Assembly: GCA_965240325.2 (NCBI GenBank)
Contig: OZ251222.1
Coordinates: 4,092,001-4,156,000 of the forward strand
Direction: 5' to 3'
DNA: 64,000 bases
Source: Rebecca billardiae RCC1528
Taxonomy: Eukaryota > Protista > Haptophyta
Below the pieces are notes generated by a model, which saw only the letters and a list, made by a program, of their open reading frames with translations, was not told the origin of the DNA and ran no database searches. Position 1 is the stretch's first letter, and each line of letters begins with the position of its first letter. The position numbers were made by a program, and so were the translations under genes. Shown here in pieces: positions 26,155 to 64,000 of the stretch.

Positions 26155-26202
26155 ATCTCGCCTGCCTGAGCTGTGTGCGTCTCTTATTCTTAGTAAACTG
26201 TA
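26155..26202 (+). repeat. 48-nt dispersed micro-element, copy 1
   Basis: ATCTCGCCTGCCTGAGCTGTGTGCGTCTCTTATTCTTAGTAAACTGTA. Confidence 0.9.
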
Positions 26203-26226
26203 TGTTATTGTCATTCGTGAGACGAA

Positions 26227-26706
26227 TCACTGACGGGGTTGGCGCTCCTTAATGAGCGTTTCCACCACGCGCTCAAGGAACTCGACGCGCTCCTTCAGCT
26301 GCGTGATGGTCGCCTCCGCAGCCGCCTGCTCTGCGCTGCTGAAGGTGGTAATCTCGTAAGCCTCGGGGTGTGGCAGCTCCGCGCGACGCATATTCGGACT
26401 GTGATCAGGCGACGCGTACGAAGCAGCACGATCCGAGGCAGCGGGTGGCGAGGCCGTCGTTCCCAGACCCAACGATGCCGAGGATGTCGGCGGCGCGTGG
26501 TCTGAGTTGCCGAAGAAGCTCGCCATCTCGTCATTTAGCTCACGAATTTGCTCGTCCGTCGGCGGTGGCGCTGGGCCGCGACTCAGATGCCGCGGGAGAG
26601 GAACTCGTCGGGCATCGAATCGCCCCCACAGCCGAGCCGCCGCCATCGCTGAGGAGACCGATAGCGCTACAGTACTCACTAATCTGGCAGCCTGGCCTAT
26701 CGCCAT
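26227..26706 (-). CDS. Hypothetical protein with C-terminal coiled coil
   Basis: 159-aa ATG ORF; ITQLKERVEFLERVVETL heptads. Confidence 0.55.
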   Translation of the reverse strand: MAIGQAARLVSTVALSVSSAMAAARLWGRFDARRVPLPRHLSRGPAPPPTDEQIRELNDEMASFFGNSDHAPPTSSASLGLGTTASPPAASDRAASYASPDHSPNMRRAELPHPEAYEITTFSSAEQAAAEATITQLKERVEFLERVVETLIKERQPRQ

Positions 26707-27503
26707 GACAGCAGCTGTGCTGATGAACTTATAGGCTTAGCTGTGCGACGCTTGCTTGCGCCTGACCACTGACTTGATGATGCATGGGAAGTGAGGTGAG
26801 ACAGGGGAGGCCCGACTCACGCGCTCGGTGCGCTCCCCCGCTGGCCCGGCAAGCCATGGAGCCGATGGCTCTGGCGACTGCCTTTTGGTACGGTGCCTGA
26901 CTGCCTGTCGCGCGAGGCGAGCCGCGTGCCTTCACGTTTGGCCTGCGGCACGCCCGTTTTGCCCGGACGTTCACTGTCCGGCTCAGCCGGGGCGGCTGCA
27001 GATTAGTAAGTTACCACGAGCCTTCGGTCGTTTTCGTCACCATCACATCACTGGGGAGTAGGCTTAATTAATCAGCATGGAGTCGCGACCGGACATATCG
27101 GTCATCGATCGCCATCGAGATCTCTAAAGCCGAGACGTCTCGCCTAAGACGTCTTGGCATACGTCAGCTGCGCGGCTGCGCTGACCGTTGAGCCCAGGAT
27201 TCGCATTGCCGCATTACGGCATAACGCCGGGGCGCATCGTTTACCGAGTACGGGCCCAACAGATCACAGAGTCGGACAGACTCACAGCGGTAGCCGGTAC
27301 TGCGCGTCACGCTGGTGCCCGGGGTGGCCGAGCACGGGACCACGTCGCGGCCACTCACAGAGTCTGACGAGTCGGCCTGCAACGACGCCGGTGATGGCTG
27401 CGAGGCTGCCGGCCATGGCTACCGGCGCGCCCCCACCGCTCGCAATAGGTGAGGCCCCGCCACTCGCCACGCGGCGCTGGTGGGCGCCGCGCGCTGTGCC
27501 GGC

Positions 27504-31563
<4,060 letters not shown>

Positions 31564-31785
31564 CACGGCAAGTGCCGGCGCCCGACCCCTGCCCTCGTCC
31601 AGGCCACGGGGCGGAAGGGCGCGACGTCAGCCCCGGAGGTAGTCGCGAGTCGCGACCTTTTCAGCCGGCACCATCTCGTCCGGATTTGTTTTCTTCGAAT
31701 CCACGATGGCGAGCGCCCGGACGGACGGGTGCGCAAAGCCGCACAACGCACAACAGACATCAGTCAGGCCGTTTTTGTTCGCAGC

Positions 31786-32838
31786 ATGGCGGACAAGGTG
31801 AGCCCACAAGGGCCGAGCCCGCCGCCGGTGGTGCGGAAACCGACGCGCCAGAGGAGCAGCGCGCCGCCGCCTCGTCCTTTCAATCTCATCCCCACGCTCG
31901 ATGTGAAGGCTCATCGTTCAGCCGTGCGCGCGCTCTGCACACATGGCGGCCGGCTTGCAAGTGGCGGCTACGACGGCGCGGTCTGTGTATGGGACGTTTC
32001 CCGCGCAGACCGGCCGGTTAACGCCCTGGGAGGCCCGGAAACGGGCAAGGTGTATACGCTGCTGGATGTGCCGACGCGCGGTCTCCTCGCGTCTGCGGGC
32101 TCAGATGGCCTCATCCGCTTCTGGGACGTCCGGATCGGCGAAAGCATCATGACCCTGCAGGGCCACACGTCCGCTGTGACCACGCTGGCGGCGCGGGCGC
32201 AGAGCAACGAGCTCTTCTCGGGCGGCGGCGACGAACACGTCCTCATATGGGACTTGCGTTCCGGCACGGGCACGAGCGCCCTCCGTGGGCAGAACACCTC
32301 GACACGAGACATGGTGTTTGCGCACGGCGACAACAGCATTCTCTACACGGCGGGAGGCGACGGGCAGATTCGCGCGTGGGACTGCACCCGTGACTTCCGC
32401 GCGTCGGTGCAGCGGTACCACGCGATCGAGCTGCTGCGCGGGCCGATGTTCGGGGTGTCCAGCCTTGTTCTCACGCCTGGACGGCCGCTCCTCGCCTCCG
32501 CCGGCCTGGACAACGTCATCTACTGCTGGGACCTGACTGCGCATGCAGCCCTGACGGGTGCTGGGCGCGTGCGCGCGGCCACGCACGTTCTCAAAGGGCA
32601 CCTCGGCGTGGTGAATGCGGTGGTCTCGTGGGGCGAGACTGTCCTCGTGTCGGCGAGCGCGGACGGCACCGTGCGCGCGTGGGACTCCGCTGCGGAAGAC
32701 GAGGAGGCGGCGCTCATGCGCACGTTCCCGATCGGAGAAGAGTACAGCGTCAGGTCCCTCTTGGCGCTCGAGGACACGCGGCTGTGCACGGGCTCGTCAG
32801 ATGGCCACATGCACGTGTGGCTGCGACTTGATGAGTAG
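31786..32838 (+). CDS. WD40-repeat protein
   Basis: About 7 GH...SG..D..V..WD repeats; first ATG 31786. Confidence 0.9.
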   Translation: MADKVSPQGPSPPPVVRKPTRQRSSAPPPRPFNLIPTLDVKAHRSAVRALCTHGGRLASGGYDGAVCVWDVSRADRPVNALGGPETGKVYTLLDVPTRGLLASAGSDGLIRFWDVRIGESIMTLQGHTSAVTTLAARAQSNELFSGGGDEHVLIWDLRSGTGTSALRGQNTSTRDMVFAHGDNSILYTAGGDGQIRAWDCTRDFRASVQRYHAIELLRGPMFGVSSLVLTPGRPLLASAGLDNVIYCWDLTAHAALTGAGRVRAATHVLKGHLGVVNAVVSWGETVLVSASADGTVRAWDSAAEDEEAALMRTFPIGEEYSVRSLLALEDTRLCTGSSDGHMHVWLRLDE

Positions 32839-34939
32839 TGAAACGGCCGAGCAGTGTCAGACGACCGTCGTCGGCACCGTACTCGGCGCGTATACGTACT
32901 ATAAATCCAAAGTGCAGCAGGCGGCCGGCCCGCGTATATAGCCGCGGCATAGCCGGACAATGTCAATGACGGACAGACGACGGTTATGACGGATGATAGG
33001 AGGGCCGCCGGTAATAGGAGGCGACGACAGCGGCGGCTGAATGTTCGGGCGCACGCATGCGCATAATAATCGACGAATAATATAATAAAAAAACTGTGCC
33101 CTGGCGGGCGGGGCCGGGTCGGCGGGCCGTGCCAGTGCTGTCGCAATGTATCCTCTGCGGGTTCGCGTCTTTCCACATTCGCTCGTGGCCGTGGGTGACG
33201 GACAGTCGAGTGCAAGGACCAGTGACACGTGAAGTTGGCTCCCCGACGTGTACACCGTGACCGGTCTCAGTCTGTACTGCTCGTATGCGCATCAGCGAGG
33301 CCCCACACCCACGAGGGAATGTGCAGCACGCGGGGCGGGCCGGGTAGCCCGTTGCTCCGCGCGAGCGCGGGTACGCGCTGTATGTGCCGCATGTCGACCG
33401 CGACGGCGTAATCGAGCGCCTCGCCGCCGACGAAGCCGCCAGAGTAGATCATGTGCATGTCCTCCTGCCGCCAGCCGAGAGCGGTCGTCGCGAGGATGCT
33501 TGCCGGTGTCCGCTCCAGGCATGATGGGCTCGGCGCAGGTCGCGTTGACGTCGTACACGGCCGCCACGCTGAGCACGAGCGCGTTGACGTTTACGCGGTC
33601 GTCGCTCTTCGCATCTTCGACAGGTCTGGCGCTCGTGTGCTCGGCGGCACGAGGAGCTGTTGGTTGTGCGCGCGCGCGCGCACAGCGACAGCGTGTGCCA
33701 CTCGCGATCGAGAGTGGGCAAGCGCTGCTCACGCGAGCACACGAATCGCAGCGCATCCGTCACCGGCGTGACGACTTCCGCCTCGTCCCGCAGCGCCTGC
33801 GCCATGGACGAGGCCATGGCGCGGCGATGTTGCATGCTCGACGTTTCATCTCTCTGCGGATGGCATCACGGGCTTGTCTGTGTCGCGCTGCGGCGAGGGT
33901 CGCCAACTCGCGATGACGCGGTTGCTGCCACGGCGACAGACCCGGGAGAGGTGCGTCCGCTGCGCGTCGTACGCCGTTGGCGCTGCGCTTCCGTCGCATT
34001 GGTCACCGTCGACGCCATGCAGGCCGGACGTGGGCTTCGGCTGAGGGACCGGACCGCGAGCAATGACTGAGTCCGGTGCGCGGATTCCGGCGATCGAGTT
34101 CAGAAGGCCGCGCCAAATCTTGCGTCGCGTGCGATGGCGCTTCCCGCCCGCGAGACGCCTCGTGATGAGGGCTTTCTCGCACCGAGCCCGACGCGCGACG
34201 GTGGATCGCGCGAGGCGGTCATCGTGCGCAGCGCATGATGCTATGGCCGGTGCGAGCTTTCGACGTGCACGTCGGGCGAGGATCGCCCCAGGTCTCACGA
34301 TCGTGTCGACGCGCCGAGCGTACCGCTCCAAACGCGTCGATTTGGGCCCCGTTCGACCTGCACGCGAGACGACGAGGGCAGCAATCGCGAATCGGGCGAA
34401 ACCCCCCCTCGGGAGTCCTCTCACGATGTCCGCGCCGGCGTTGGATTTGGCGCGCGCCGCCCACGCGCTCCGCGCCATGGGCAACCCTTTTTCGGCCGAG
34501 CGTCCCCAGTGGGAGCTGCGAGGGCGCCCGGTAGTGAGCGAAGCGGTTTTCTTTTCTTGGCGAGGCGATTTTCTTTATTATTTTCTTTTTCTTATCTTTT
34601 TCCCGGGCACTACAAGGGGCGGACCTACGGCCCGCCATTAGTTCTTTCGGAATCGGATCGTCAACTTGATGATGAAGGCTTACTACTAGTATAACTTATA
34701 ATAAGGGCACGGGCATAATATGGCGCGCAGTCTATCAGCAGTCTGATTTGACAATGTCCGTTTCATGCAATATATAATGAGCAGTCGACTACAGTCTGCT
34801 GTCGTGAGACGGTCCGTCTGCCAAGCTGGCAATCGAGTCCGCAAGACGGTAACCTATATAAGGCTATAACATCCATCGACATAAATCCGCCTGCGTGCCA
34901 CTGTCACTGACGATCGAGTCGACGAGACTCACGGTATAA

Positions 34940-35032
<93 letters not shown>

Positions 35033-35045
35033 ATATATGTGTGTG

Positions 35046-35097
<52 letters not shown>
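34940..35097. repeat. Compound microsatellite (TA)n(TG)n(CT)n
   Basis: Direct reading. Confidence 0.95.
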
Positions 35098-35099
<2 letters not shown>

Positions 35100-36119
35100 T
35101 CATCGACATTCGTCGTGACGGTGTCGGTAGCTATCTAAGACTGAGTGAGACTCCGATATCCTTCGTCAATTAATCGTAACGTTAAGAGCGCGCAGGCCTG
35201 GCACTCGTCTAACTCGACAGGCACTCTGACTGAGTGACTCTGTCCAGGGTGCTCCGTAGCAGACACCGTAGCTCACTGTCTGATGACAATCTCTGAGACA
35301 GACGGTCAGACTCAGTCTCTGTGATCGACAGCATTCTGCATTGATATCCGGATCGTGCGAGTAGACATGCTCGCCGACGACTCGGCACGTGGGGGCCGGG
35401 TCATGCCTTGCAGCGCCAGCAGCGCGGGGCCGCCGCGAGTCTCGGCGGTCCGACCGCGCCGCCGGCGCGGAATCGGATCGAATATTCGATGAATCCATCA
35501 TCGTCATTATTGCCGGAGTATCACTATAAGCTAGCGAGTTAGTATGGGCTAATGGGATTTGCTAATGGGGGCAGTGCCGCGCCGCAGCCGCAGGCCGCGT
35601 CAAGGCACTCAAGCCCCCGACAAGCCGTGGACTCGCCATTCCGCCGAGTCCGCGGTCCGCGCGCCACTTATTGGACTTCGGCGGTCCGACGGGCATCCGG
35701 ATTCCGCCGATTCCGGTTGGGGTGGAATGGGGTGATGGAGTCTGGCCAGACGCGAGACGGCGAGAGCATTATAGAGCAGTAGTCTGCAGTACGTACGTAG
35801 CTGCTAGTAGCAGTGCTAGTAGCAGAGAGACCACAGCAGTCCGTCGGAGAGCCCCATCGCCCATGCGGCATGCCGCATGCGGCCCCGATTTATTGCGGGC
35901 TCCGCCCGGCACGGTCCGCCGGTCGACGTCACGGGCCCGGGGCAGTGCCCCGTCGATCGGCTGCTGCGCGCGCATCACGTCCCGACCGTACGGCAGCACA
36001 GAGCGCTAGCCCGACTCATCATCCATGCCATCCAGCGGCACGGGCGCGGCACAGGCGCCGACCCGAGTGTCCCGGCGTCACTCCGATAGATGTTGAAGCC
36101 CGCCAGGCTGTGCTGCCAC

Positions 36120-37326: not shown

Positions 37327-40300
37327 TCACGCATGGGCGATCGGTTTCGTGCTGGGGGTGGCGGAGCTCTGCGTCCGTCGCCTCAGCGCTTTGTTGTCTT
37401 CCTTAATCGGCGCTGCTTGTTCCGCCCGGTTGACGAGCTCGATCGCATTTTCGGCTTGGCGCTTCACTCGCATGATTTCGATCGTGAGCGAGATCTGCGT
37501 GGAGAGCGCCTGCGCGACGACGACATCTTCCTGGGAGAAGGGCACGATGTCGTTCGGGTTGCCGACGTACGGATGCTTGTTGATGAGCTGGATGACGCCG
37601 AGCACGTCGCCGTCCGTCGAGCGCAGCGGGATCACGACGACCGACCTCGTGACGTAGCCCGACGACCGATCCACAGCCGGGTTGAACCACGGGTGCTCGT
37701 ACGCATCTTCGACCACGATGGTCTTGTCCTGCGCGATCGCCGCCGCAGCGAGCCCCGCGCGCTGGGCGAGCCCACCGCGCACGGACACGATGAGCGTCCG
37801 ATCGAGACCGGTCGCGTACACCGAGTAGAGCTCCAGCCTGGACGGCTCGTACAGCCAGAGGGAAGATCGATCAATCACAAGCTGCTTCTCGGCGTACGAC
37901 ATGATGCGCCTGCCGATGGTGCTGAGCGAGCGCTCGTGCGTGTGCGCCTCAGCGCCGTGCTCCTCGTCGCGTGTCGCCTCGAGCACCGCGGCGGACTCGA
38001 GCAGCAGGTTGGCGCGCTGCCGCATGCCGAGGGCCTGCTCCTCCATCGCCTTCACCTTCGCCTCCTGCATCGACATCCTGCGCGCCGTGGCATCGACGGC
38101 GCGTCGGTTGGCGCGCACGGCAGACCGCGCGTGTGCGCGCATCGGGGATGGGAGCGAGCGTGAGCGCGCGCCGCCGCTCAGCACGCAGCAGGGTGAGCTG
38201 CACGCCCAGCAGGCCGCAGGGCATAGCCGGACGCGCGCACGGCGCGCGCCTGTGCATGATGCGCCTCATGCGGATGAAGTTGTACGCACGCAGCCACGCC
38301 ATGCGCGCGGCATGCCGCCGCCGCAGCACGGCCTCGCCCGACGAGCCCGAGGCGCGGAGCACGAGCACGGCGCACTTGCCGATCAGCTCTGCGCGCGCGA
38401 GGGGCGCCGCAGGGCGTGCGGGCGGGTGGCAGGTGAGGGCGTCTCGGACGACTCGCGCGCGCGGGCGGCGCGGGCGAGAGCGCGCGACCGCGCGCGCGCG
38501 CGCACCCATCGCCGCCTGCTCGAGCTTGCCCAGCGGCTCCGCCCCTTCGTCCATGGCACGGCTGGGTGGCGCTGCGACTCCCGCCGATTCGGCGTCGTTC
38601 GGCCGCGTCGGCTCGATCTCGAGCACGACGTGTTCGGACGTGCTCACGGGGAGCGACGTGTACAGCGGGCCCGCCGGCTCGCCCGGGCTGACGCGCCTCG
38701 CGCGCTCGAGCTGGCCCGAGGGCAGCGCGCGCAGCATCGGCCCGTGCGTCTCGTCCGGCAGGTCGTCGATGGAGCGCGGCGGCGCGTGGGTGAACGAGCC
38801 CACGCCCGCGGCCGCGACGTACGCGTCGTCGCTCGTGACCGCGCGGATCACCTCCTCGTCCTCCTCCTCCAGGTTGGACGCGTCCGCGTCGCTGCTCACG
38901 TTGTACAGCGCGCGGTGGGCGGACGCGAGCGACTGGTTGCGGCTGTCGAGCCACTCGGCGGTGAGGTGGGCGCGCAGCGAGCGCGAGCGAAAGCTGCCGA
39001 TCTGCTCGCCCTCGCCCTCGGCCGTGCCCTCGCCCTCGCCCTCGCCCTCGCCCTCGCCCTCGGAATCGTCGTCGCTGCCGTCCGTCTGCCGCCTGCCCTC
39101 GTGCACGTGCCACACGGCCAGCCTGGAGAGCGCGCCGAGCGGCCGCGCCGAGGCCACGACCGTCTCGAGCTGCATGCGGCGCGGCGGGTACGTGATGGCG
39201 GCGGCGGCGCGGCGCATGACCGACGTGCACTCGCGCTGCACGCGCTCGAAGCGCGCGCGCGCCGAGAGCCTCTCGAGGCGCGAGCGGCGCACGTCGAGCA
39301 GCCGCGCCTGCAGCGTGCGCGCCGCCCAGCCGGCGCAGATGAGCGTAAGCTCCGCAAACGGGGAGCCGCCCTCCTCGCGGCTGCGCCCCACGAGCTGCAG
39401 CACGCCCTCGGCGCTGCTGGCCTGCGCGCGGCCCGCGCCGCCCTCGCCCGCGCCCGCTGGGTGCTCCGCGCCGGCCTCGCCCTCGGCCGGAGCACCGTCC
39501 GCCGCGTCGGCGTTCGCCGAAGCCGCCGGTGCCGACGAGTCGGTGCGCGCGCGCAGAGGCACAGCAATCATGGGCGTCAGGTCGGCGACGCGCCCGTCGT
39601 CGCGCAGGCTGTAGCGCTCGTCCTTGCTCGCGTCGTCGACGACGATGGTGCTGCCCGTGTCCACCGCCATGCCGACGATCCCGCTCCCGACGAACGCCCA
39701 GCTCGAATCACCGCCGCTGCCGAGCACCTCCAGCCGGGCGCGCGCGAGATGGTCCCGCACGAGCACGCGAGCGGTGGCGCAGCCGAGCGCGGCCGGCAGC
39801 GCCGCCTTGACCACGTCGGCAATCTCCGCTTCCGTCTGCGCCTCCGCCAGCTGGGCAAGCGCCTCGAGCAGGGCGCCGAGGCGCTCCGCCTCCGGCAGCG
39901 GTGCCGACGGCTTCGCGCCCGCGCCGGCCGCCTCGTCAGCGGCCGCCTGCTTCTCGCGCAGCGTCAGCCGGATCTCATGGTGCTGCGAGCGCGCCGCGAT
40001 CAGGCTGCCCCGGCGCGCGCTGATGGAGCGCACGGGCCCGGCCTGCGATTGCGCGCCGGCGGCGGCCGCGCTGCGCTGCTCGGCCTCGCGAGCGCGCTGC
40101 CTCGACTCGAAGGCCGCCGCGCTCTCGAGGCGCTGCGTGACGATCGCCGCCTTCTCGCCCAGGTCGCGCGCCCCGAATCTGGACGCGCCGAGCATCACGG
40201 CCACAGACTCGCGGCCGCCGCGCTCGAGCGGCTCCTCGTGCAGCGGCAGGTGCGGCTTGCCGCCAAACCCGCGGTGGCGTCCGATGGAGTTGCGCCGGGC

Positions 40301-41431
40301 GGGTGACGGCAGCATCTCGCTTCTGGAGAGCAGCACCTTCTGCGCGAACGGCGACGGCGCGGCGCTCGCGTGATGGTGCTGGCTGCCACTGGGCGAGCCC
40401 ACGCCGCTAGCACTCGCCCATCGCGGGAGCGCGCCGCCCGCGCCCGGCGAGGCGGGCGTGTGGATTGGCCGCGGCAGAGCCTCGGGGCCCTGCGGGCGGA
40501 ACACCTGTTGGAACCGCTGGGTGCTGAGCGGGGGCGTGCCTTCGACGAGTGCCGCCGACGCCGACGCGAGGACCGACGCCACGCTGCCTTCAGGTCGCAC
40601 GCCCTCCAGTGCATCAGCAGCATCGTAGCTGGCGGCCGCATCGCCGGTACCAGTAGCAGCCGTGAGCGCGGCACCCGCAGGCGCCGCGCCGTGCAGGATG
40701 GCGAACTGGCGCGGGGCCTGCGCCGGCGGAGTGTCAGAGGACCACCGGCCACCGGCGCGGAGGTCGCGGCAGCCCCGCGCCTCACGCCTCGCCCCGGCTG
40801 CCTCGCCCGCCGCGCTCGCCGAGCGCTGGGCGCTTCCCTCAGCCGCCGCGCTCGCGGAGGCGTGCGTGAGCCCAGAGCGCTGCTCGTGCGCGTCCGGCCC
40901 GGCAGCGTCGTTGCCAAGCGCACTCGCCTGCGCGAACGTCTTCGGGGGCGGCCGTGGCTCACTGGCGGGAGGCGCCGTCACCGAGTCCCGCCGGCGATCG
41001 TCGGCCTTCGTAGCGGAGGCTGCGCCAGCAGCAGGCTCGCCCCCATTTGGCCAGGCGCGCTCTTTTGCAGCCGCGTCCACAACAGGCGCTGTCATCTCGG
41101 CTTCCTCGTGGCGGGAGGTCCACGGCGCGACGGGGCTGGTGCTCGAGCGAACTCTTGGCACGACTGCAGGGGACGTCGATGGGCGGGAAGACGAGTCCAG
41201 CGCCGTGCCTTGCCATATGACGCCTGCCGGTGCCCGGCCCGCGCGATTTCGGCGGCCCGTCGTCATGATGCGGTGCAGCTCGAGGTCGGAGGCGTTCGTG
41301 GACGGGTACTGCTCGCGCAGGTTCATGGCGCCTATGGCACGGATGCGACGCCCGCTCTCACGCGACTGGTGGTCGAGCAGAGCTTGCTTCGCCTCGAGCT
41401 GAGCTTGCAGGAGGTCTTCGCGGTCCGGCAT
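37327..41431 (-). CDS. Large GAF-domain protein; introns 38389-38505 (GT-AG) and 38078-38249 (GC-AG)
   Basis: Two GAF-like domains (GIVGMAVDTGSTIVVDDASKDERY; VEDAYEHPWFNPAVDRSSGYVTRSVVVIPL...VLGVIQLINK). Confidence 0.8.
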
Positions 41432-41521: not shown

Positions 41522-41569
41522 TACAGTTTACTAAGAATAAGAGACGCACAGAGCTCAGGCAGGCGAGAT
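41522..41569 (-). repeat. 48-nt dispersed micro-element, copy 2
   Basis: Reverse complement of copy 1 with one mismatch. Confidence 0.9.
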
Positions 41570-48920: not shown

Positions 48921-49025
48921 GAGGGCGACCGGCCTCGTCCCTTTGGACGACGACGGCGCGCCGAGCCTTTCAAAAGACCGCACTGGCTGGCAACCGAGGG
49001 CCCTGATGAGATTCGCATCAGAATA

Positions 49026-49069
49026 CGCCTGCCTGAGCTGTGTGCGTCTCTTATTCTTAGTAAACTGTA
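49026..49069 (+). repeat. Dispersed micro-element, copy 3 (44 nt exact)
   Basis: CGCCTGCCTGAGCTGTGTGCGTCTCTTATTCTTAGTAAACTGTA. Confidence 0.9.

Positions 49070-52824: not shown

Positions 52825-52878
<54 letters not shown>
52825..52878. repeat. (AG)n microsatellite
   Basis: Direct reading. Confidence 0.95.
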
Positions 52879-52880
<2 letters not shown>

Positions 52881-53266: not shown

Positions 53267-54580
53267 CTACTCGGGGCACCCATTGGCACGCGCCCAGTGC
53301 AGGATGTGGAGGTTGTCAGAGTGGATCGCGGACTCACACGTCGACTTGTCCCACGGGCACCCATTCTCTCGCGCCCACTTGAGCACTTCGAAGTGGCCAC
53401 CGCCAGCGGCGGCGGCACACGTCCACTGGTCCCACGAGCTCCCAAACTCGCGCGCCCAGCGCAGGACGTGCAGGTGGCCCTTGCGCGCGGCCACGCGGCA
53501 GATGTCCGCGCCGTCCCACGGGCAGCCATGCTCGATCGCCCAGCTGAGCACGTCGAGGTGGCCGTTGCGCGCGGCTGCTGCGCACGTGGCCTTGCTCCAG
53601 TCGCACTTGTTCCTCCCGGTGCGCGCCCAGATCAGCACGTGCAGGTGGCCGTGCAGCGCCGCCTCGGTGCACGTCCACGCGCTCCAGCGGGACGGGCAGC
53701 GCTGCGCCGGCTGCGCGCGGATGTAGGAGAGCACGTCCAGGTGGCCGCCGCGAAGCGCGCGCACGAACGCCTGGACGTCCACGGGGCAGTGCTGGTCGAG
53801 CGCCCAGCGGAAGATCTCGAGGTGTCCGTGCGCGGCGGCCATGGTCGTCGTGCAATCGTCCATCGGGCAGCCTTCGAGCACCGCCCACTGCAGCGCCTCG
53901 AGGTGGCCGCCCTGCGCGGCGCTCGCGCACGTGTGGGCGTCCCAGCTGCAGCCTTGCGCGCGCAGCCACTGGAGGACCTCGAGGTGGCCGCCCTCGGCAG
54001 CCGCGGCGCACGCCGCCGTGCCGAGCGGGCAGCCCAGGCCCACCGCCCACTGCAGGAGCTCCAGGTCGCCGTTGCGCGCGATCGCGGTCGCCGTGCTCGC
54101 GTCCCAGCGGCAGCCGTGCGCGCGCGCCCACTTGAGCACATCGCGGTGGCCGCCGCGCGCGGCGGACAGGCAGGTGCGCGCGTCCATCGGGCAGCCGTTC
54201 GCGTGGGCCCACCGCAGCATCTCGAGGTGGCCGTGCGCCGCGGCGGTCGCGCAGAGGGAGGGCTCCCACGTGAGACGGGACTCGCTCAGCATCATCTGCG
54301 CGCACTCGAAGGATCCGCACGCGAACGCCGTCTCGACGAGCCTGCCATCCATGTACGGGGCGTACGCCTCGTCCTTCGCCCAGCGCACCCTCGCACTGCT
54401 GCTCGCAGCTGTGCGAATGGTCGCACGCAGCGGCTTCCCGCAGTGTCGCACGGCGCGCAAAAGCGCTTGGCACGTCAGCGCAAAGCACGTCACGTCGTCC
54501 TCGTGTACGGCCGCTGCCACAACCTGCAATTCGTTCTCGCCGAGGAAGTTGACGAGAGACGGCGCCAACGATCGCAGCAT
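53267..54580 (-). CDS. Ankyrin-like repeat protein (GCPWD..TC..AA..GHL..L.W type) with F-box-like N-terminus
   Basis: More than 10 repeats of ~25 aa; first ATG 54580; intronless. Confidence 0.9.
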   Translation of the reverse strand: MLRSLAPSLVNFLGENELQVVAAAVHEDDVTCFALTCQALLRAVRHCGKPLRATIRTAASSSARVRWAKDEAYAPYMDGRLVETAFACGSFECAQMMLSESRLTWEPSLCATAAAHGHLEMLRWAHANGCPMDARTCLSAARGGHRDVLKWARAHGCRWDASTATAIARNGDLELLQWAVGLGCPLGTAACAAAAEGGHLEVLQWLRAQGCSWDAHTCASAAQGGHLEALQWAVLEGCPMDDCTTTMAAAHGHLEIFRWALDQHCPVDVQAFVRALRGGHLDVLSYIRAQPAQRCPSRWSAWTCTEAALHGHLHVLIWARTGRNKCDWSKATCAAAARNGHLDVLSWAIEHGCPWDGADICRVAARKGHLHVLRWAREFGSSWDQWTCAAAAGGGHFEVLKWARENGCPWDKSTCESAIHSDNLHILHWARANGCPE

Positions 54581-54844
54581 CGCCGTGGTCGGGGGAGCGG
54601 CGGGTCGAACGGGGGGCGTCTCGAAGGGGATCGAGGGCGGACGCGAGATGCCGAACTCGTCTGCCTCTGTCCGTGCTGTTGCTGCGCGGCAAACACTCAA
54701 ACAGTGGGGCAAGGCCCTTGAGGACCGCCCTTGAGATGATGAGTGGGGGCCGCCACGACGTGACCGCGTGAAAGGGTCGGTGCTGTCCGTGCTGTGCTCC
54801 AGTTTCGCGAGGTGACGTGTGTAAAAATAGTAGGCTCTGTACGG

Positions 54845-54901
54845 TACAGTTGATGACTAAGAATAAGAGAGAGACGCACACAGCTTATTATTAGAACTCA
54901 G
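54845..54901 (-). repeat. Dispersed micro-element, diverged copy 4
   Basis: TACAGTTgatgACTAAGAATAAGAGAgagaCGCACACAGCT: core retained with small insertions. Confidence 0.75.
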
Positions 54902-55717
54902 CGCTCGACGCGCCGCGCCGTCAAGGAACGCCAGGCGCGCAAGGCGGCGCGCCTGGCACCGACCGCTGCACCCACGCCAGTCCCTGCTGCCCCGCTCCAC
55001 GAGGACCGAGACTCGCCCCCGGGCGACGACTTGGACGACGAGGAGCTGCCGCAGCAGCGGACGAAGCGCACCCTGGACGACGCCGCAGCGCCAGCCGCCG
55101 CCAGCCAGCCAGCTGGCTCGAGCGGCAAGCGCGTACGCGACCGCCCGGGGAGCACGGGGCAGGTACGACCAGCTGCTACCAGCGGCTGAGACTGCCAGCT
55201 GACATCCGGACCTGCACCATCGCCCTCGCTCGGGGCACAGCAGGGCCATGCGAGCCGCGCAGCGCAGGTGGATCGCGCTCCAGCAGCTCAAGGCCGCGCT
55301 CAAGCTTTACGATCGCGGTGCAGGCTATGCTCTGCCACCAACGCCGACTTCGTGTCGACGATCGGGCACTGCCGCCGACGAATCAGGAGACCCGCGTCGT
55401 CCTACCTGTGTCGTTAAATCATAGAATGAGTCAGGTCACATGCAATCGTAAGACGCAGTCTGATGATCAAGAGTCAAGTGCCATGATTCAACGACAACGG
55501 AGCCCGACTCGGACTTCAGTAATTATCAGTCACACAGTAGTGACGAGCCCGGCGTGCCCGCGTGAACTATCCGGTCGGCGCCTCCGCGGCCGCGCCCGGA
55601 GGCCAGCAGGACGGTTACCAGGTGACAGGTCTCCTGCCCGGAGTGCTGACGCGCGTGGTGACGGCTGACGCCAGCGGGCTGCGGTAGGGACGAGTCACGA
55701 GACCTGAGCACTGTCAA

Positions 55718-56878
55718 CTACATGTATCCTCCGCCCCCACCAAAGGCATCGCCGAAGCCGTCGGTGCGCATGGCCTCGTCCTCGACACCCTTCGCCACCT
55801 CGCGTTGCAGCTGGTTCACCTTCTCGCGCAGCACGTCGACGGCGATCTTGACGATCAGCTGCGGCGGCATGACGCCGGTCGTCTCGACGCAGAAGATGAA
55901 GCGGTTGGGCCGATCGCGGATGCGGACGAGGTCCGGTGCGGTCTGGTCCTTCTCGCGGTGGTAGTCGTTCCACACCTCCGCGAAATACGCCATCCTGCGC
56001 CGCGGCGCGCGGCCGTGCGGGCGCGGCGCGCGGTCAGCGGCGCGCGCGCGCGCCTGGCGCGGCGCGCGGCGCGGCGCGGCTGCGCACTTGTCGAAGAAGT
56101 TTGTGTCGCGCGCCTTCTCCTCGTCCACCGCCTGCGTGTCCACCTCGATCGTGCGCGCGAGCTCGTTGTAGGAGAAGACCTTGCTCGGGCAGTTGCCCGG
56201 CGGCTCGTCGGTGGGCGTATTGACGAACTCGTGCACCTTGTCCACGGGCAGCGCGGCGAGCGCCTCGTCGTTCAGCTCGATCTCGCCGTCCTGCTGCATC
56301 GCCACGGTCGCAGTCGGGTTCCACTTGGCGTGCTCCTTGCCAATGCCCTTGCGCGCGATCGCCTCGATCTTGAGGGCCTGCCCGGTGGCGAGCTTGGCGA
56401 TGACGATCCCGCCGCCGGCTGCCCCACTGAAGTCGTCGTCGACGCCCTCGGCGTCGACGGGCTTCACGCTCTCTACCTCCGTGCGCAGATCTCTCGACGT
56501 CACGTTGCGCCGATAGTCCTCTTGCGAGCGCACGTCCAGCGTGAACCTGACGGAGCAGTTGGGGCACATCTCCATGCACGAGCAGTCGCGAGAGTAGTTG
56601 TACTGCGTGGCCGACTCGCTGCGCAGCGGGATCATCCCGAGCCGGTGCGCGATGTACTCGTCGTGCAGCACGGATGTGTTCTCCTGCACCTCGACCAGGT
56701 CGATCGCGAGCGTCGGCACCTCTGCGATCATCACGCGTCGCAACGAGTTGGCGACCGAGATGTCGACATCTGTCATCATGAAGGTGATCGACTCGTCCGT
56801 CAGGTGGAGCACCTCGACGCCGGGCTCCGTGCCCGGCGCGGCGCGGTACGGCATCGGCGGCGGGTGGTGCGGCGCCAT
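55718..56878 (-). CDS. RPB3: RNA polymerase II subunit RPB3; intron 55995-56087
   Basis: ANSLRRVMIAEVPTLAID, NTSVLHDEYIAHRLGMIPL, CSCMEMCPNCSV, ARKGIGKEHAKWNP, FCVETTG. Confidence 0.96.
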   Translation of the reverse strand: MAPHHPPPMPYRAAPGTEPGVEVLHLTDESITFMMTDVDISVANSLRRVMIAEVPTLAIDLVEVQENTSVLHDEYIAHRLGMIPLRSESATQYNYSRDCSCMEMCPNCSVRFTLDVRSQEDYRRNVTSRDLRTEVESVKPVDAEGVDDDFSGAAGGGIVIAKLATGQALKIEAIARKGIGKEHAKWNPTATVAMQQDGEIELNDEALAALPVDKVHEFVNTPTDEPPGNCPSKVFSYNELARTIEVDTQAVDEEKARDTNFFDKCAAAPRRAPRQARARAADRAPRPHGRAPRRRMAYFAEVWNDYHREKDQTAPDLVRIRDRPNRFIFCVETTGVMPPQLIVKIAVDVLREKVNQLQREVAKGVEDEAMRTDGFGDAFGGGGGYM

Positions 56879-57059
56879 CGTGCACGAGCGAGAGCGCGAA
56901 AGCGCCGCCCTCGTGCACGCTGCCGCACCGGCAGGCGGGCCTTGGTCAGTGCGTCCGGGCAGGTGCAAGGTTGGAGCTTCGTCCGGTGCTGTGGCCAGGC
57001 GATCACGTCCACGCGCATCGTGCCCAGGGCCGGGGCCGCGCTGAGCGCGCGTGACCACC

Positions 57060-58675
57060 ATGAACGCGAAGAAGCGATCGGGCGGCGACCGCGACAAGGC
57101 GGTCGTGCGCGATGAGCGCTTCGCACGCCTGCACACGGACCCTCGCTTCGTGCGCTTCCCCAAGCAGAAGAACAAGGTCAAGGTGGACGAGCGCTTCAAG
57201 GCGATGTTTGAGGACGACGACTTCAAGTCGCGCACGCGCGTGGACAAGTACGGGCGCAAGCTGCAGCCAAAGTCGGACGACGAGCTCATCCGCAAGTTCT
57301 ACGACCTTGAGGACGACGAGGACGACGAGGACGACGAGCCCGCCCACGCGCGCGCAGCCGACGAGGCCGAGGTTGAGGGCGAGGAGTCGGCCGAGGACGA
57401 CGAGCTCGACGACGACGAGGCGCTGCTCGCGCTGCACGAGGGCGACGACGAGGACCCGGCGGCGAAGCCGCGCGAGGCCAAGCGCAAGCCGAAGCGCGTC
57501 GTCGACCGCTCGCGCGGCATCGGCGTCTCCGACTCGTCCTCCTCCGAGTCGGAGGACGACGGGCCGCTGCCGCAGGACGAGGCGGTCGAGCAGGACGGCG
57601 CGCTTGTGCGCTGGCTCGACGCGAGCGCGGAGCCGGGGCTCGAGCTGGAGGAGGCGACGTCGCGGCTGGCTGTGCTCAACTGCGACTGGGACCACGTGAG
57701 CGCCGCCGACATCTTCGTCCTGCTCTCCTCCTTCGTCCCCTCGGGCGGGCGGCTGCGCCGCGTGACCGTCTACCCGTCCGCGTTTGGGCGCGAGCGCATG
57801 GCGCGCGAGGCCGTGAGCGGGCCGGAGCTGCGCGCGCGCGCGGAGGCGGCCTCGGCCGCGCGGGCGAGCGGCGACGGTGGGCCTGCCGCCGACGAGGACG
57901 ACGACGCCGACGGCGGCGTCGACGAGCAGCGCCTCCGCGAGTACGAGCTGAGCAGGCTGCGGTACTTCTACGCGATCGCCGAGCTGGACGACGCGGAGAC
58001 GGCGGCTGCCGTGTACGAACAGTGCCAGGGCGCGCAGTTCGAGGCGAGCTCGATGGTGATCGAGTGCCAGTACGTGCCGGACGAGACGAGCTTCGAGGGC
58101 GACGAGGTCCGCGACGCGGCGACCGAGATCCCACCCAACTACGCCGCGCCCACCTTCGCCACCAAGGCGCTGCAGCAGTCGCGCGTCGAGCTGACTTGGG
58201 ACGCGGAGGACGCGCGGCGCAAGAAGGTGATGCAGCGCGACTTCAGCAAGGCCAAGGACGCGCTGCGCGAGGACGACTTCAAGGCGTACCTCGCGTCGTC
58301 GTCCTCGGAGGAGGAGGAGGAGGAGGAGGACGAAGTGGACGAGGAGGACGGCGCCGCGCCGCGCAAGCGCAACGCCGCCGCTCGGCGCTCCGCACTGGCC
58401 GGCGCGCTCGGCGCCGCGCGCGAGAGCGCAGCGGCCGGAGACGAGCGCGCGCGCTCGCGCTCGCACGCGGCTGGCGGCGAGATGGAGATCTCGTTCGTGC
58501 CGCAGCAGGAGGATGCGCAGGCGCGGGGAGGCGGCGCGCGCGCGGACGAGACGGTGTGGGAGGCGCGCCAGCGCGTGCGGCGCGAGAAGCGCCTGCTCGC
58601 CAGGGCGCAGCGGAAGCGTGGCGCGACAGCGCCGACAGCGGACGACAACGCTGCCGGCGCGGCCGCCGGCTCTGA

Positions 58676-58709
<34 letters not shown>

Positions 58710-59034
58710 TTCGGACATTACGACGTGGCCGCGCCGGCGCGTGGACGGCGGCGGTCCGGGCGCGGGGGCAGCGAGAACGAGAGCGACGAGCCCGACGACG
58801 ACGACGGCGAGTCCTTCTTCCTCGGCGGCGGTGGCGGCAGCGGCGGCCGCAAGGCGGCCCGCGCGCGCGGCCTGGAGCCAGCCGAGCCGGGCGACTTGGC
58901 CGCCAAGGCCGCGCGCCGCGCGGCCAAGAAGCGCAAGCGCGGCGCGCGCGCGGACGGCGACGACGCGGCGGGCGCGCAGCCGAGCGCAAGCGACGCGAAG
59001 AAGCGCGCCGAGCTCGAGCTGCTCACGATGGGCG

Positions 59035-59071
<37 letters not shown>

Positions 59072-59675
59072 GTTCTGGGGCGGCGACGAGGAGGCGGAGC
59101 GACACTACGACCTGGGCGCGCTGCTCAAGCACGCGGCCGCGTCGGGGCGCAAGGGCAAGAAGCGGGGCAAGCGCGGCGCGCGGGGCGAGGAGGAGATGCC
59201 GCCGGCGGACGGGGACCCGTTCCGGATGGACATGGCCGACCCGCGCTTTGCCGCCCTGCGCGAGTCTGCGGACTTCGCCATCGACCCGACCGATGCGCAG
59301 TACAAGCGCACGCTGGGTACGCGCGCGGGGCGAGCGCGTGCGCGCGCCGCTCCCGGTGGCGAAGCCTGCGCGGTGTGCCGCGCAACGCACTGTCAAGAGC
59401 GCTCACAGCGCTCCTCGCGCCCCATCGCGCCCACTGCCCGCGGCGCGCACGCAGGCATGGAGCAGCTGCGGCGCAAGCTCTCGCGCGACGTCGTAGCCAG
59501 CAGGGTCGGCGCCGCCCGACGAGACGACGGGCGGGGCTCGCGCGGGGATCATGCCGAGGCTGGCACCGGCGGCGATGCAAGTGCCGCGCACGCGACGAGC
59601 TCGCTCCGCACGCTTGCCCAATCCGTCAAGAAAAAGGCGCACGCGCGCGGGAAGAGGAGCGCGACGCAGGCTTAG
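57060..59675 (+). CDS. ESF1: Pre-rRNA-processing protein ESF1; intron 59317-59454
   Basis: D.RF..L..DPRF, VDKYGR, TSRLAVLNCDWDHV.A.D, V.VYPS.FG.ERM, LREYE..RLRYFYA, VELTWD, NUC153-like D.RF.A......FAIDPT. Confidence 0.93.
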
Positions 59676-59961
59676 ATCGAGCGCACTATTTGCTGAGCTG
59701 TGACAGTGCGCAGAGTCATATTATTAATAATTATTATCAACGGTGCCTGCGCACGGTGTCCGTCCGGACTCGGCGGACTCCGGAGTCGTCACAATCAGGC
59801 GGCAAACTGTGCTGCTGTTACTTATATATAGCAGGAGTGTGTATATATATATAGCAGCGCAGTGCAGTCATTGATCATTGTCGTCGACGACCGTTAGTAT
59901 TATCACTCCGCCTCAGTAGGCGCCTCAGGTCCCCCGGGACTCACTGAGTCAGTCACTGGAG

Positions 59962-60912
59962 TCAGGCGTCTATGGCCGCGCGACTCCCGAAACGCCAAGC
60001 GGGCCCGCCGGGGCGCTTCCGATCAGGACGGCTCTCAGCCCAGTTGTCCCCGCCACCCTTCCCACCGCCAGTTTGAGGCGCGCTCTTCCCACCACCACTG
60101 AAGCCACCAGCCCCCCGGCGGTGTCTGCTGCCGCCAGTGTACCGCTCCTTGCTCAGTGTGATCGTCCTGTTGACCTGCCCCGGGGTGAGCCTGAGTCCAA
60201 AGTGGCTCGCAATGCGTCTGACGAGGGGGTCGGGCCTCAGGAACAGGTCCGGCGTGTGCACCACGAGAATCCGCCCTGGGGATTCGCGTCCAACCATTTC
60301 GGCGAATGCCAGCCAGCGCTCCGAAAACCTCTGCAGGGCTGCGAGCTTGTCCAGCGCCGCCTCCTCCAGGTCCTGCTTCGGCCGCGGGTACGTCTCGAAC
60401 TTGTGAATGAGCGGAGCGTGACGCGTGTACGCCGCGGCAGCATCAAGCGCGTTACGGAGCAGCAACACGACTCGGGCGCCCCGATCCTCGCGCAAAGCGG
60501 CCCCCAGCACAGCGATGTTGCTCGGCGTAGGCGTGAGGTGTTGCTTGTAGATGGTGTCCCTGCTTTTCACCAGCCCAGCGAGCCGCTCCATATTCCAGGA
60601 GCACGTGTCCGTGTGCGGCAGCGATAAGTATATGAAGTCTTCAGCCGACTTAGCGGCAGCACGCCCATGCACGAAGCTCGCCCTCAGCTTGTCCTGCAGC
60701 CACTCGCACGGGTACAGCTGCGTGCTGTTTGTGCGTGTCGCCGCCCCCAGGGTGGTCATCAGCGCAGTGGATCCTGATTTGGGCATAGCCACGATCAGGT
60801 ACGCATGCACAGTCCACCCATCACTCGCCGCTGCCGCCACGATCAGCGCCATGAGGCCGGGACACCATCGCACCCTTGGTCGCGCGCGCGTGGGCGGGGG
60901 AGCCGTCGACAT
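59962..60912 (-). CDS. Sulfotransferase-family protein with signal anchor
   Basis: IVAMPKSGSTAL PAPS loop, KQH, VLLLRNALD...AY, DL...P...V.RI..HFG. Confidence 0.75.
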   Translation of the reverse strand: MSTAPPPTRARPRVRWCPGLMALIVAAAASDGWTVHAYLIVAMPKSGSTALMTTLGAATRTNSTQLYPCEWLQDKLRASFVHGRAAAKSAEDFIYLSLPHTDTCSWNMERLAGLVKSRDTIYKQHLTPTPSNIAVLGAALREDRGARVVLLLRNALDAAAAYTRHAPLIHKFETYPRPKQDLEEAALDKLAALQRFSERWLAFAEMVGRESPGRILVVHTPDLFLRPDPLVRRIASHFGLRLTPGQVNRTITLSKERYTGGSRHRRGAGGFSGGGKSAPQTGGGKGGGDNWAESRPDRKRPGGPAWRFGSRAAIDA

Positions 60913-61105
60913 CCTGATTCCTGATCCTCTCCCAACCGGATTGCATGGTGATTTGACGAGATTTGAGATTTCCGCCCGTTGATTTCGTCATCGGTCGTCA
61001 CTCGTCAGTGTCCGGCGCGCACGGGTGGTGCGCACGCGCGGCTGGAGCGCACTCCACAGCAGCTTCAAGCTGCAGCTGCTCCACGCGTCCGCCTCTCCGG
61101 GCGAC

Positions 61106-63071
61106 ATGCGCGCGGATGGGGCTGAGCCGCAGGAGCAGGCGCCCGCCGTGGAAGAGGCTTTCCCCGGTCTCGGTGCGCTCTCGGACGAGCCGCACCTGCT
61201 TGCGACGGTGTTCACGCACCTGCCGTTCAACCTGATTGGCGCGGTGTCGCTCGTCTGCCGCACGTGGGCCGAGGTCGCAGCCGATCCGCACTGGAAGCCC
61301 GACGTGGTGCTGTTCGCGTGGGGGCATCACACGTGCACGGGCCTCGACGACGACTGCGGTCGGCCGACGCTGCTCGAGTTCTCGCTCCGCCAGCCGATCC
61401 AGCAGATCGCCTGCTCGCACGCCGCCACGCTGGCGCTCACAGTCGGGGGCGAGGTGTTCCACTGGGGCACCGACTGCCGCATGGAGGTGGGCTGGACGCC
61501 CGAGCCGCGGCGAGTCGAGCCGCTGCGCGACATCGCGTCCGTCGCATGCAGCGTGCCGGGCTACCACCACGGCCGATCGTCGCAGGTCGAGGCCTATCAC
61601 TGCGCCGCGGTTGGGCGCGATGGCTCGCTGTTCACATGGGGGTACGCGGCGCGCGGCCAGCTGTGCGTCGAGCCCAAGTGCAGCGACGGCGAGCTGCTCT
61701 CGCAGGAGGACGCTGACTTTGTCGGCCTCCAAGTGCGCGAGTATGGGTGCGTGGGCTGGGTGCACCACCCCATGCGCGTGCGCCGCTTCGGCCCGCCCAC
61801 CGAGCGGACGGCCGCGCACGTGCTCTCGCGAGGCCGCGCCGTCGAGCGCGTGCGACACGCCTGCTGCGGCCTCACGTGGACTGCGCTCTGCATCGAGCGC
61901 GAGGAGGTGGTGGCAGAGGCAGAGGGCGACGAGGAGTCAGACGAGGCACGCGCGGAGGGCGGCAACGCCGCGTGCTCTGCGCTCCTCACCGAGATCGCCC
62001 TTGTCGAGCGCGCCGCGCCTGGCGCTGACAGCGGCGGCGGCGGCGGCCACAGTGACGACGGCGGCGATGAGAGGTCGGGCCCCAAGCCGGGCGGCGTGGA
62101 CGTCGGCGCTTCGCTGCATTACCACGGCGGCGCGGCCGCGCCGCTCATGCTCGTCAAATCGAACCGGCCGTCCGCCCTGCGAGCGGCCCTCGAGAAGCTG
62201 CCGCCGGGCTCCCAGGTGCTCGCGCCCGACGGCCGCGCCGTGCAGCTGCGTGCGGGCGTTCTGATCGCGCGCGTCACGGCGGTCGAGGTGTGCGGCCACT
62301 TCTGCCGAGAGCGGCCGCACATGCTGGCGGAGGAGCCCGAGCTGCGCGGTGTGCCACTGCGCGCGCTCGTCGCTGGCGGCTTCCATTGCTGCGCGCTCAC
62401 GTGCGCCGGCCAGTTGTACACCTTCGGCGACACGGTGTGCGCGCGTCCATGCGTGGCGGGCCGAGGCGGCACGTCCGTGCCGGGCACCGTGCCCGCTCGC
62501 GCGCGCTCATCCGTCCCTCGCCCTCCGCGCGCGCTGCGCGCCGTTTCGTGCCGCGCCGCAGGTCGGCCGGGACCTCTCGAACGGGAACCTCCTCGGGCTG
62601 GGCGCCGAGCCCATCCTGCTCGGCTGCCCGCCCCGGCGCGTGGGCTTCCTGGGCGAGGTGCGCGAGGTGAGCGCCTCCACGTACATGTCGGTTGCGATCA
62701 GCGAGGGCGGCGGCGTGTTCACGTGGGGCGACTCGGACGGCGGCGCGCTCGGGCACAGCCAGCGCGAGTGCGACGTGCCGACGATGGTGAGCGCGCTCGC
62801 GGGGCTCGACGCGGCGTACGCTGCCGCGTCGTACACCAACGGCGGCATCGTCACCGCCGAGGGGCGCGCCTTCATGTGGGGCGGCACTGACTGGGAGTAC
62901 GGCATCACGCGCGACTCGGCAGTTGGCGCGCACGATGGGCCGCGCGAGCTGCGCTGGGGCGGCGTGCCCGCGTGCTACAAGTGCTCCTCGATGGCGCTCG
63001 CGCACCGCCACGGCTACCTGCTCTTCCGCAAACAGCGGGTGCACACATCTAGCAGTTCGCCTGCGCCATGA
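61106..63071 (+). CDS. F-box plus RCC1-repeat protein; intron 62435-62561
   Basis: F-box LLATVFTHLP...SLVCRTW; RCC1 motifs G.VF.WG, GSLFTWG...GQL, GQLYTFG, VFTWG...GALGH. Confidence 0.85.
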
Positions 63072-64000
63072 TGGATTGACGATGACGGCCGCCGGATCGT
63101 CATCGCGCGGCAGCGGTGAGCGCGGATGCTGAGTGGTGACTCCGACTCGCGTCGAGTCCGACGTCCGAGTGGCGAGTTACCGACTCCGTCTCCGTCGTCC
63201 GCAGCATGCTGATGGGTGTCGTCCGATGGGCCGGTGACAGTTGGCGGGCGTCAATCTCGCGCCTGCTTGAGCTGGTGTGCTAACTACTACCTTATCCATA
63301 GTATCTCTTTGTTGGCCGCGGGGAAGATACGCTAGCGTATCTTCGATGGCGCCCCGGCGCGCGTGAGCTCTGACGGCGCGTAGGAGGCGCGCGCGAGGGC
63401 GGCCGCGGGCGCGATTGATGCCTGGGACCTCAACGACAACTCACATGACGAGACATTCTCTTCTGATGCCGATGACGGCCCTCCAGAGGCGACCGCGCTC
63501 GACGACGGTCGTGATTTGGACGACTGCGGCGCTGCGCGGCGTGAGGCGGAGGAAAGCGGCGCGGCGCAGGGCTTCGAGTGGGCTGTGGCGATGGAGCAAC
63601 TTATCATCGTCAACGCCATCGCCCCGAGTGCCACCGCGCTGCCGCACGCCACGCCAGTTGCGCCAGTGCAAGCTACGCGCGGCCGCTGCGGCACGAGCCG
63701 GGGGCGTGGCCAGCAGCGCGGTGGCCGCGGTGCCTGAGCAGGGCGTTGCAGGTGCGACCAGCGCGCCGCTGCCACCGCGCGCTCGTCAACAGTTGATGGA
63801 GTCGCGAATGCCGTACGTCCCGCCGACTAGCCCGCCCTGTGTGCTGTCGCCGTGACCCCTCAATGCTGTTGGTCGTCCGACGACGAGCTGCCGAGCGCGT
63901 CGCTGAGCGTGTCGCTCAAAACGTCAGTCGTGGAGCTCTCTGACGTGCGCGGCGCTTGCTGCCCATTAAGTCAATCATGTTGGGCACCTCCTGGGGCACC

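What the first reader, a model, noticed from the sequence alone, without database searches (positions are those of the whole stretch)
26155..63280. Highly conserved 48-nt intergenic micro-element recurring 4-5 times
Seen: ATCTCGCCTGCCTGAGCTGTGTGCGTCTCTTATTCTTAGTAAACTGTA at 26155-26202 (+), 41522-41569 (-, 1 mismatch), 49026-49069 (+, 44 nt exact), diverged at 54845-54901 (-) and partial at 63254-63280. All are intergenic with unrelated flanks, and the four main copies lie within ~270 bp of a gene start or stop. One end is sharply TA|CAGT (like a Tc1 end) but there is no matching TIR or poly-A tail. Inference: a very abundant minimal mobile unit, a protein-bound boundary element, or a retroposed small-RNA/leader relic.
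Basis: partly seen in the sequence, partly recalled or inferred. Interest (0 to 1): 0.75.

Follow-up and report, generated by a model that had tools for sequence, protein, structure and literature searches.

The report
Truncated LINE retrotransposon tail stubs
The recurring 48-base motif is the last stretch of a roughly 10-kb jumping gene (a LINE retrotransposon), which has left over a thousand tiny tail-only copies across this GC-rich alga's genome; it is an ordinary repeat, not a new mobile unit, boundary element or leader.

Summary
Three near-perfect copies, one diverged copy and one partial copy are at or near the stated coordinates, and none is expected by chance.

- **Parent element:** it is longer than 9.7 kb. 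It has one open reading frame of at least 3,109 aa with an AP-endonuclease domain and a reverse transcriptase domain, so it is a LINE.
- **Truncation series:** copies share the exact 3' end and stop at nested 5' points from 39 nt to at least 9.7 kb.
- **Genome counts (72 Mb):** about 1,100-1,200 tails, 544 of them perfect over 44 nt. About 437 pass position 66, 22 reach 1 kb, and 5-7 reach 10 kb.
- **Unusual trait:** half of an unbiased sample of copies start at 45-49 nt, and 79% start inside a predicted 14-bp hairpin. The 45-49 nt starts fall in its 7-nt loop. I infer that the reverse transcriptase usually leaves its template there.
- **Conservation:** it reflects youth (about 1% divergence), not constraint.
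- **Tc1-like end:** the resemblance is superficial.
- **Earlier reports:** the scan reached the same reading on other windows of this genome (s1-371933, s1-371943).

The parts
26155..26202 (+). 48-nt LINE tail stub, identical to the parent's last 48 nt; it starts in the hairpin loop
41522..41569 (-). 48-nt LINE tail stub with 1 mismatch, 91 bp upstream of the ATG of ORF 37949..41431 (-) and in the same orientation
49026..49069 (+). 44-nt LINE tail stub, exact; it starts at the boundary between the loop and the 3' arm
54845..54885 (-). Older, diverged stub matching the last 34 nt of the tail, with a 2-nt and a 3-4-nt insertion
   Evidence: read directly
63226..63280 (+). Decayed LINE 3'-UTR fragment (positions 25-75 from the end, 91% identity) that holds the hairpin region but lacks the terminal ~24 nt

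Best explanation
Each copy is an extremely 5'-truncated insertion of one young LINE (non-LTR retrotransposon) family. The parent is longer than 9.7 kb. Its single giant ORF carries an AP-type endonuclease and a reverse transcriptase. By eye it also carries an RNase H motif set, a CCHC knuckle and OTU-like Cys/His motifs. A 359-nt 3' UTR follows and ends in ...TAGTAAACTGTA with no poly(A). Shown: reverse transcription products share that exact 3' end and stop at variable 5' points, and most stop after only 44-62 nt. Inferred: target-primed reverse transcription starts at the RNA 3' end. The enzyme then usually leaves the template in the loop or 5' arm of a predicted 14-bp hairpin at positions 29-65 from the end. 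This could be because the element's own protein is bound there, or because the RNA is cut there. The enzyme either terminates, giving a stub, or jumps to the 3' end of another template, giving head-to-tail stubs. The 5' end appears to be joined to the target through 2-3 nt of microhomology (GT/GTA). The high sequence identity reflects recent activity, not function.
For: - **Junctions:** the 3' junction is sharp and the 5' junction variable in 32 copies.
- **Nested truncation series:** 50-435 nt, 539-1134 nt, then 2453, 3219, 4506, 4617, 6006 and at least 9699 nt.
- **Parent ORF:** L051 11..9340, 3,109 aa without stops. Pfam finds RVT_1 at E 6e-25 and Exo_endo_phos at E 5e-7. The RT matches the R2 and L1 ORF2 structures.
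- **Genome counts by position from the 3' end:**
  - positions 1-23: 1,090
  - positions 28-48: 1,196
  - the 44-mer: 818 with up to 3 mismatches, of which 544 are exact
  - positions 44-66: 437
  - positions 71-93: 358
  - about 220-440: at least 129 candidates
  - about 920-1134: 22
  - about 10 kb: 5-7
- **Start points:** in an unbiased sample of 34 copies, 17 start at 45-49 nt and 27 start at 39-62 nt.
- **Hairpin:** it is predicted in both the 100-nt and the 359-nt folds, and its loop spans positions 45-51.
- **Tandem stubs:** seen 47-50 nt apart.
- **5' junction:** 10 of 34 flanks end in GT/GTA, against about 3 at shifted control positions.
- **Shared tail:** a second repeat family of 459 copies shares the last 12 nt.
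Against: - **Target-site duplications:** none extending into the downstream flank could be shown, so the classic TPRT footprint is incomplete.
- **Hairpin:** it is a prediction only. The fold energy is no better than shuffles in this GC-rich sequence (z -0.79), and no covariation test was possible.
- **Why the enzyme stops in the loop:** the stop comes after the 3' arm has already been copied, which simple stalling at a stem does not explain.
- **Extra copies of the 28-48 segment:** some lack the canonical tail (1,196 against 1,090), so 3'-variant subfamilies blur the counts.
Confidence: 0.93

Rival explanations
1. The 47-49-nt unit is a discrete RNA species, made by cleavage in the hairpin loop or transcribed on its own. 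The LINE enzyme would mobilise it in trans, making it a minimal tail-only retroposon.
For: There is a very sharp length class, with 16 of 34 sampled copies at 47-49 nt. Head-to-tail units 47-50 nt apart look like end-to-end template jumps. A second family sharing the 12-nt tail shows that the tail is sufficient for recognition.
Against: Other lengths form a continuum (39, 44, 45, 55-57, 62, 94 nt and up to 10 kb) with the same 3' end. Forty-eight nt leaves no room for a known promoter. Rfam finds nothing. No RNA data are available.
Confidence: 0.12
2. The motif is the terminal inverted repeat of a Tc1/mariner-type DNA transposon (TA|CAGT...), surviving as solo ends.
For: The reverse complement begins TACAGT, and a Tc1-type transposon lies in the same window at about 8259-17594.
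Against: There is no inverted partner, and only one end is sharp. The other end extends in a nested series into an RT/APE reading frame. The window's Tc1-type element has unrelated termini.
Confidence: 0.01
3. The copies are kept by selection as a gene-proximal functional element, such as a promoter or UTR motif or a protein-bound boundary.
For: All window copies lie 25-170 bp from ORF ends.
Against: They occur in both orientations and at both gene starts and gene stops. Identity is explained by about 1% divergence, the same as in the long copies. In a gene-dense genome any tolerated insertion is gene-proximal. No match was found in metagenome contigs.
Confidence: 0.04

Closest known systems
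5'-truncated LINE copies made by target-primed reverse transcription (for example L1 or R2)
   Same: It has a fixed 3' end, nested variable 5' ends, a parent encoding an endonuclease and an RT, and far more fragments than full-length copies.
   Different: Truncation is extreme. About 60% of copies are shorter than 66 nt, with a sharp peak at 47-49 nt. There is no poly(A), and clear target-site duplications are not evident.
'Stringent-type' LINEs that recognise a 3' stem-loop and a specific tail (for example eel UnaL2, which ends in TGTAA repeats; reviewed in PMC3747384)
   Same: It has a specific non-poly(A) tail, a predicted stem-loop just upstream, occasional duplication of the terminal 10 nt (L041), and a second repeat family sharing the tail.
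   Different: The stem-loop is only predicted here. The tail is a single CTGTA end, not a repeat array. Recognition by the RT is inferred, not tested.
Dualen/RandI LINEs of Chlamydomonas (APE + RT + RNase H + RLE + cysteine protease; PMC9977147, PMC4640811)
   Same: The host is an alga and the element has one giant ORF. APE and RT are confirmed, and RNase H-like, CCHC and cysteine-protease-like motifs are seen by eye. The RT is closer to R2 than to L1 in the PDB search.
   Different: No restriction-like endonuclease could be detected. No long target-site duplications were found. No RT phylogeny against reference Dualen sequences was possible.

Membership tests
Non-LTR retrotransposon (LINE), 5'-truncated copies | Parent element encodes a reverse transcriptase | tested here: met
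   Pfam RVT_1, E 6e-25, aa 1269-1552 of L051 ORF; matches R2 and L1 ORF2 structures
Non-LTR retrotransposon (LINE), 5'-truncated copies | Parent encodes an endonuclease (APE or RLE) | tested here: met
   Pfam Exo_endo_phos, E 5e-7 and above the curated cut-off, aa 559-792
Non-LTR retrotransposon (LINE), 5'-truncated copies | Constant 3' end with nested, variable 5' ends | tested here: met
   position-wise genome counts
Non-LTR retrotransposon (LINE), 5'-truncated copies | No LTRs or TIRs | tested here: met
   No inverted or direct terminal partner in 41 copies
Non-LTR retrotransposon (LINE), 5'-truncated copies | Target-site duplications flanking insertions | tested here: inconclusive
   Only 2-5 nt of overlap with the element's own CTGTA end; no better than the shuffled-partner control; GT/GTA enriched about 3-fold at the 5' junction
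Stringent-type LINE 3' recognition | Conserved 3' stem-loop | tested here: inconclusive
   A 14-bp hairpin is predicted in two fold contexts, but z is -0.79 and no covariation data exist (one search was uninformative)
Stringent-type LINE 3' recognition | Tail shared with other repeat families | tested here: met
   A second family of 459 copies shares the terminal 12 nt (examples in L006, L022, L028)
Dualen/RandI clade | Both APE and restriction-like endonuclease present | tested here: inconclusive
   APE is present. A CCHC knuckle lies at aa 2267-2290. No RLE was detected by Pfam, PDB phmmer or the Atlas
Dualen/RandI clade | RNase H and cysteine protease domains | tested here: inconclusive
   Motifs were read by eye in the translation. 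Pfam and PDB searches were negative
Dualen/RandI clade | RT groups with reference Dualen elements in a phylogeny | not testable with these tools
Tc1/mariner transposon end | Two terminal inverted repeats flanked by a TA duplication | tested here: not met
   The motif is one-ended and runs into a LINE ORF. The window's Tc1-type element has different ends
Spliced leader or other small RNA relic | Match to a known RNA family | tested here: not met
   Rfam at E up to 1 gives no hit in the 3' UTR and tail

The most novel reading that the evidence does not exclude
The 47-49-nt unit is a discrete product, not a random abortive one. The LINE RNA would be cut, or the enzyme released, at a defined point in the loop of its 3' recognition hairpin. 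The resulting tail-only units would then be inserted preferentially at GTA sites and at earlier tails. That would make this the smallest LINE-dependent retroposed unit described, and a natural marker of where the enzyme grips its RNA.
Probability: 0.12. Interest if true: 0.45.

Novelty: new member of a known kind. Interest (0 to 1): 0.15.

Why it matters
Mostly for annotation. Over a thousand 40-60-nt stubs next to genes in this alga can be mistaken for leaders, promoters, transposon ends or boundary elements. This scan has already flagged them several times. They should be masked as LINE tails. A secondary point is that the very sharp truncation peak in a predicted hairpin loop is a clean natural read-out of early template release by a LINE reverse transcriptase. 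It could guide biochemical work on how such enzymes hold their 3' UTR.

Tried and rejected
- **Long Dualen-like target-site duplications.** A 615-bp direct repeat flanks one 1-kb copy. It turned out to be two copies of an unrelated element of about 640 bp with inverted ends. No such duplications flank the stubs.
- **Short target-site duplications.** The shuffled-partner control was just as good.
- **C-terminal domains of the LINE protein.** Pfam at E up to 1, PDB phmmer and the protein Atlas all came back blank.
- **Hairpin covariation.** A diverged copy and the window's fragment were aligned, but this was uninformative.
- **Metagenome scan for the 26-nt tail.** It gave 0 hits.
- **The large protein search.** Not run, because the family scans had already named the protein.

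Full report
**Observation**

The 48-mer occurs at 26155-26202 (+, exact), 41522-41569 (-, one mismatch) and 49022-49069 (+, last 44 nt exact). None of 100 dinucleotide-preserving shuffles gave a match.

The diverged copy is real, but only 54845-54885 (-) is homologous. It matches the last 34 nt and carries two small insertions.

The 'partial' copy is in fact 63226-63280 (+). It is 91% identical to positions 25-75 from the parent's 3' end and lacks the last ~24 nt.

The window is about 68% G+C. Ranked by third-position GC, the likely genes leave all five copies intergenic, 25-170 bp from an ORF start or stop, in both orientations.

**What it is**

In the window's own 72-Mb genome the 44-nt core occurs 818 times with up to 3 mismatches. 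Of these, 544 are perfect. The reversed-pattern control gave 0.

Flanks of 32 copies show a razor-sharp 3' boundary after ...CTGTA and a variable 5' boundary. Several copies continue upstream into shared sequence. Pairwise BLAST shows a nested series ending at the same 3' base:
- 50, 67, 116, 176, 286 and 435 nt
- 539 to 1134 nt
- 2453, 3219, 4506, 4617, 6006 and at least 9699 nt

The longest copy studied is L051. It carries one uninterrupted ORF of at least 3,109 aa. The ORF has a Pfam AP-endonuclease domain at aa 559-792 and a reverse transcriptase domain at aa 1269-1552. A 359-nt 3' UTR follows and ends in the motif.

The RT matches the solved R2 proteins (E 1e-11) better than L1 ORF2p (E 2e-5).

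The motif is therefore the 3' terminus of a LINE, and the window copies are tail-only insertions.

**Abundance along the element**

Counts by position from the 3' end:

| Position from 3' end | Copies |
|---|---|
| 1-23 | 1,090 |
| 28-48 | 1,196 |
| 44-66 | 437 |
| 71-93 | 358 |
| about 220-440 | at least 129 candidates |
| about 920-1134 | 22 |
| about 10 kb | 5-7 |

About 760 copies are lost within the 18 nt between positions 48 and 66. After that the decline is gentle.

In an unbiased sample of 34 copies (the first 30 exact-core loci on contig 1 plus the window), 17 start at 45-49 nt. Two start at 44, one at 39, five at 55-57 and two at 62. Only seven are longer.

**Mechanism (partly inferred)**

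RNA folding places a 14-bp hairpin at positions 29-65 from the end, and its 7-nt loop is at positions 45-51. Both the 100-nt and the 359-nt folds show it. In this GC-rich sequence the energy is no better than shuffles (z -0.79), and I could not test covariation.

The truncation peak therefore falls in the loop, and 79% of starts fall within the hairpin. My reading is as follows:
- Target-primed reverse transcription begins at the tail.
- The enzyme usually leaves the RNA at the hairpin, either because the element's own protein is bound there or because the RNA is cut there.
- Leaving the template gives a stub.
- Jumping to the 3' end of another template gives the head-to-tail units seen 47-50 nt apart.

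The 5' junctions end in GT or GTA in 10 of 34 copies, against about 3 at shifted control positions. This suggests joining by microhomology with the element's own terminal GTA. It also fits the stacking of stubs onto earlier tails seen in L022, L028 and L033.

Target-site duplications reaching into the downstream flank were not demonstrable.

A second repeat family with 459 copies shares only the last 12 nt. This is the pattern expected when the enzyme recognises a specific tail, as described for 'stringent-type' LINEs (PMC3747384).

**Conservation**

With 544 of 818 copies perfect over 44 nt, divergence is about 1%. That is in line with the 1-4% seen between long copies. The identity reflects recent activity, not constraint.

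**Rivals**

- **Tc1/mariner end:** excluded. The motif is one-ended and runs into a LINE ORF, and the Tc1-type transposon present in this window has unrelated termini.
- **Small-RNA or leader origin:** no support from Rfam.
- **Selected gene-proximal function:** it cannot be excluded for single copies. Orientation and position vary, and gene proximity is expected in a compact genome.
- **Separately made 48-nt RNA:** this remains open at low probability.

**Comparison with known families**

This is an ordinary 5'-truncated LINE repeat with an unusually extreme and sharp truncation profile.

The parent's architecture includes APE and RT, plus an RNase H-like motif set, a CCHC knuckle at aa 2267-2290 and OTU-like Cys/His motifs read by eye. 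This recalls the algal Dualen/RandI LINEs (PMC9977147, PMC4640811).

The defining restriction-like endonuclease was not detectable, and the long target-site duplications reported for Dualen were not found. I therefore do not file it there.

**Earlier scan notes**

Two follow-ups on other windows of this genome (s1-371933, s1-371943) reached the same conclusion. I reproduced it independently here. What is added here:
- the position-wise counts;
- the coincidence of the truncation peak with the hairpin loop;
- the junction analysis.

**Limits**

- The large protein search was not used, because the family scans had already named the protein.

Noticed in passing
G000 genome-wide; examples at L006, L022, L028 beside the core copies: A second repeat family (its last 25 nt read GCACGTTAAAACATAGTAAACTGTA) has 459 copies and shares only the terminal 12 nt with this LINE. 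It also occurs as 25-28-nt stubs, sometimes stacked head-to-tail with the 48-nt stubs.
   Followed up: partly
window 10949-16789: Fourteen copies of a 417-bp tandem unit (96-98% identical) lie inside a Tc1-type transposon already noted by the scan (s1-355036, s1-355178). The transposon's ends at about 8259 and 17594 are unrelated to the LINE tail.
   Followed up: partly
window 26122-26133 and 26201-26212: A 12-nt inverted repeat (GACAATAACATA / TATGTTATTGTC) brackets stub 1, and its right arm overlaps the stub's last two bases. The stub seems to have landed in the loop of a pre-existing hairpin just past the stop of ORF 26227..26706 (-).
   Followed up: no
L043+L032 (G000:C10:3046020-3048277); also flanks in L029 and L039: An unrelated element of about 640 bp with inverted ends (beginning GTATGGAGCGCTCGTTGGAAC) lies directly against LINE junctions at several loci. 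Two copies flanking one LINE fragment mimic a 615-bp target-site duplication.
   Followed up: partly
L051 ORF, aa ~458-527 and aa ~545: The LINE protein has a tandem duplication of about 41 aa upstream of the endonuclease, and it varies between copies (a 123-bp indel between L050 and L051). An NPGP motif lies about 10 aa before the APE domain. The spacing of that motif is not that of a canonical 2A peptide.
   Followed up: no
window 5357-5634, 18999-20059, 34935-35049: Long (CA)n and (TA)n microsatellites lie in AT-rich gaps of an otherwise ~68% G+C sequence. Earlier scan notes report other LINEs of this genome that home to (TA)n.
   Followed up: no
window 53291-54253 and 30749-31048: In-frame 81-bp repeats (8 units) and 12/18-bp repeats lie inside likely coding ORFs, so these are repetitive protein genes.
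   Followed up: no
G000:C1:4189491-4189579: Two perfect tails sit tail-to-tail with one base between them (...CTGTA N TACAG...). This would be expected from two opposite insertions at one palindromic GTAC site.
   Followed up: no
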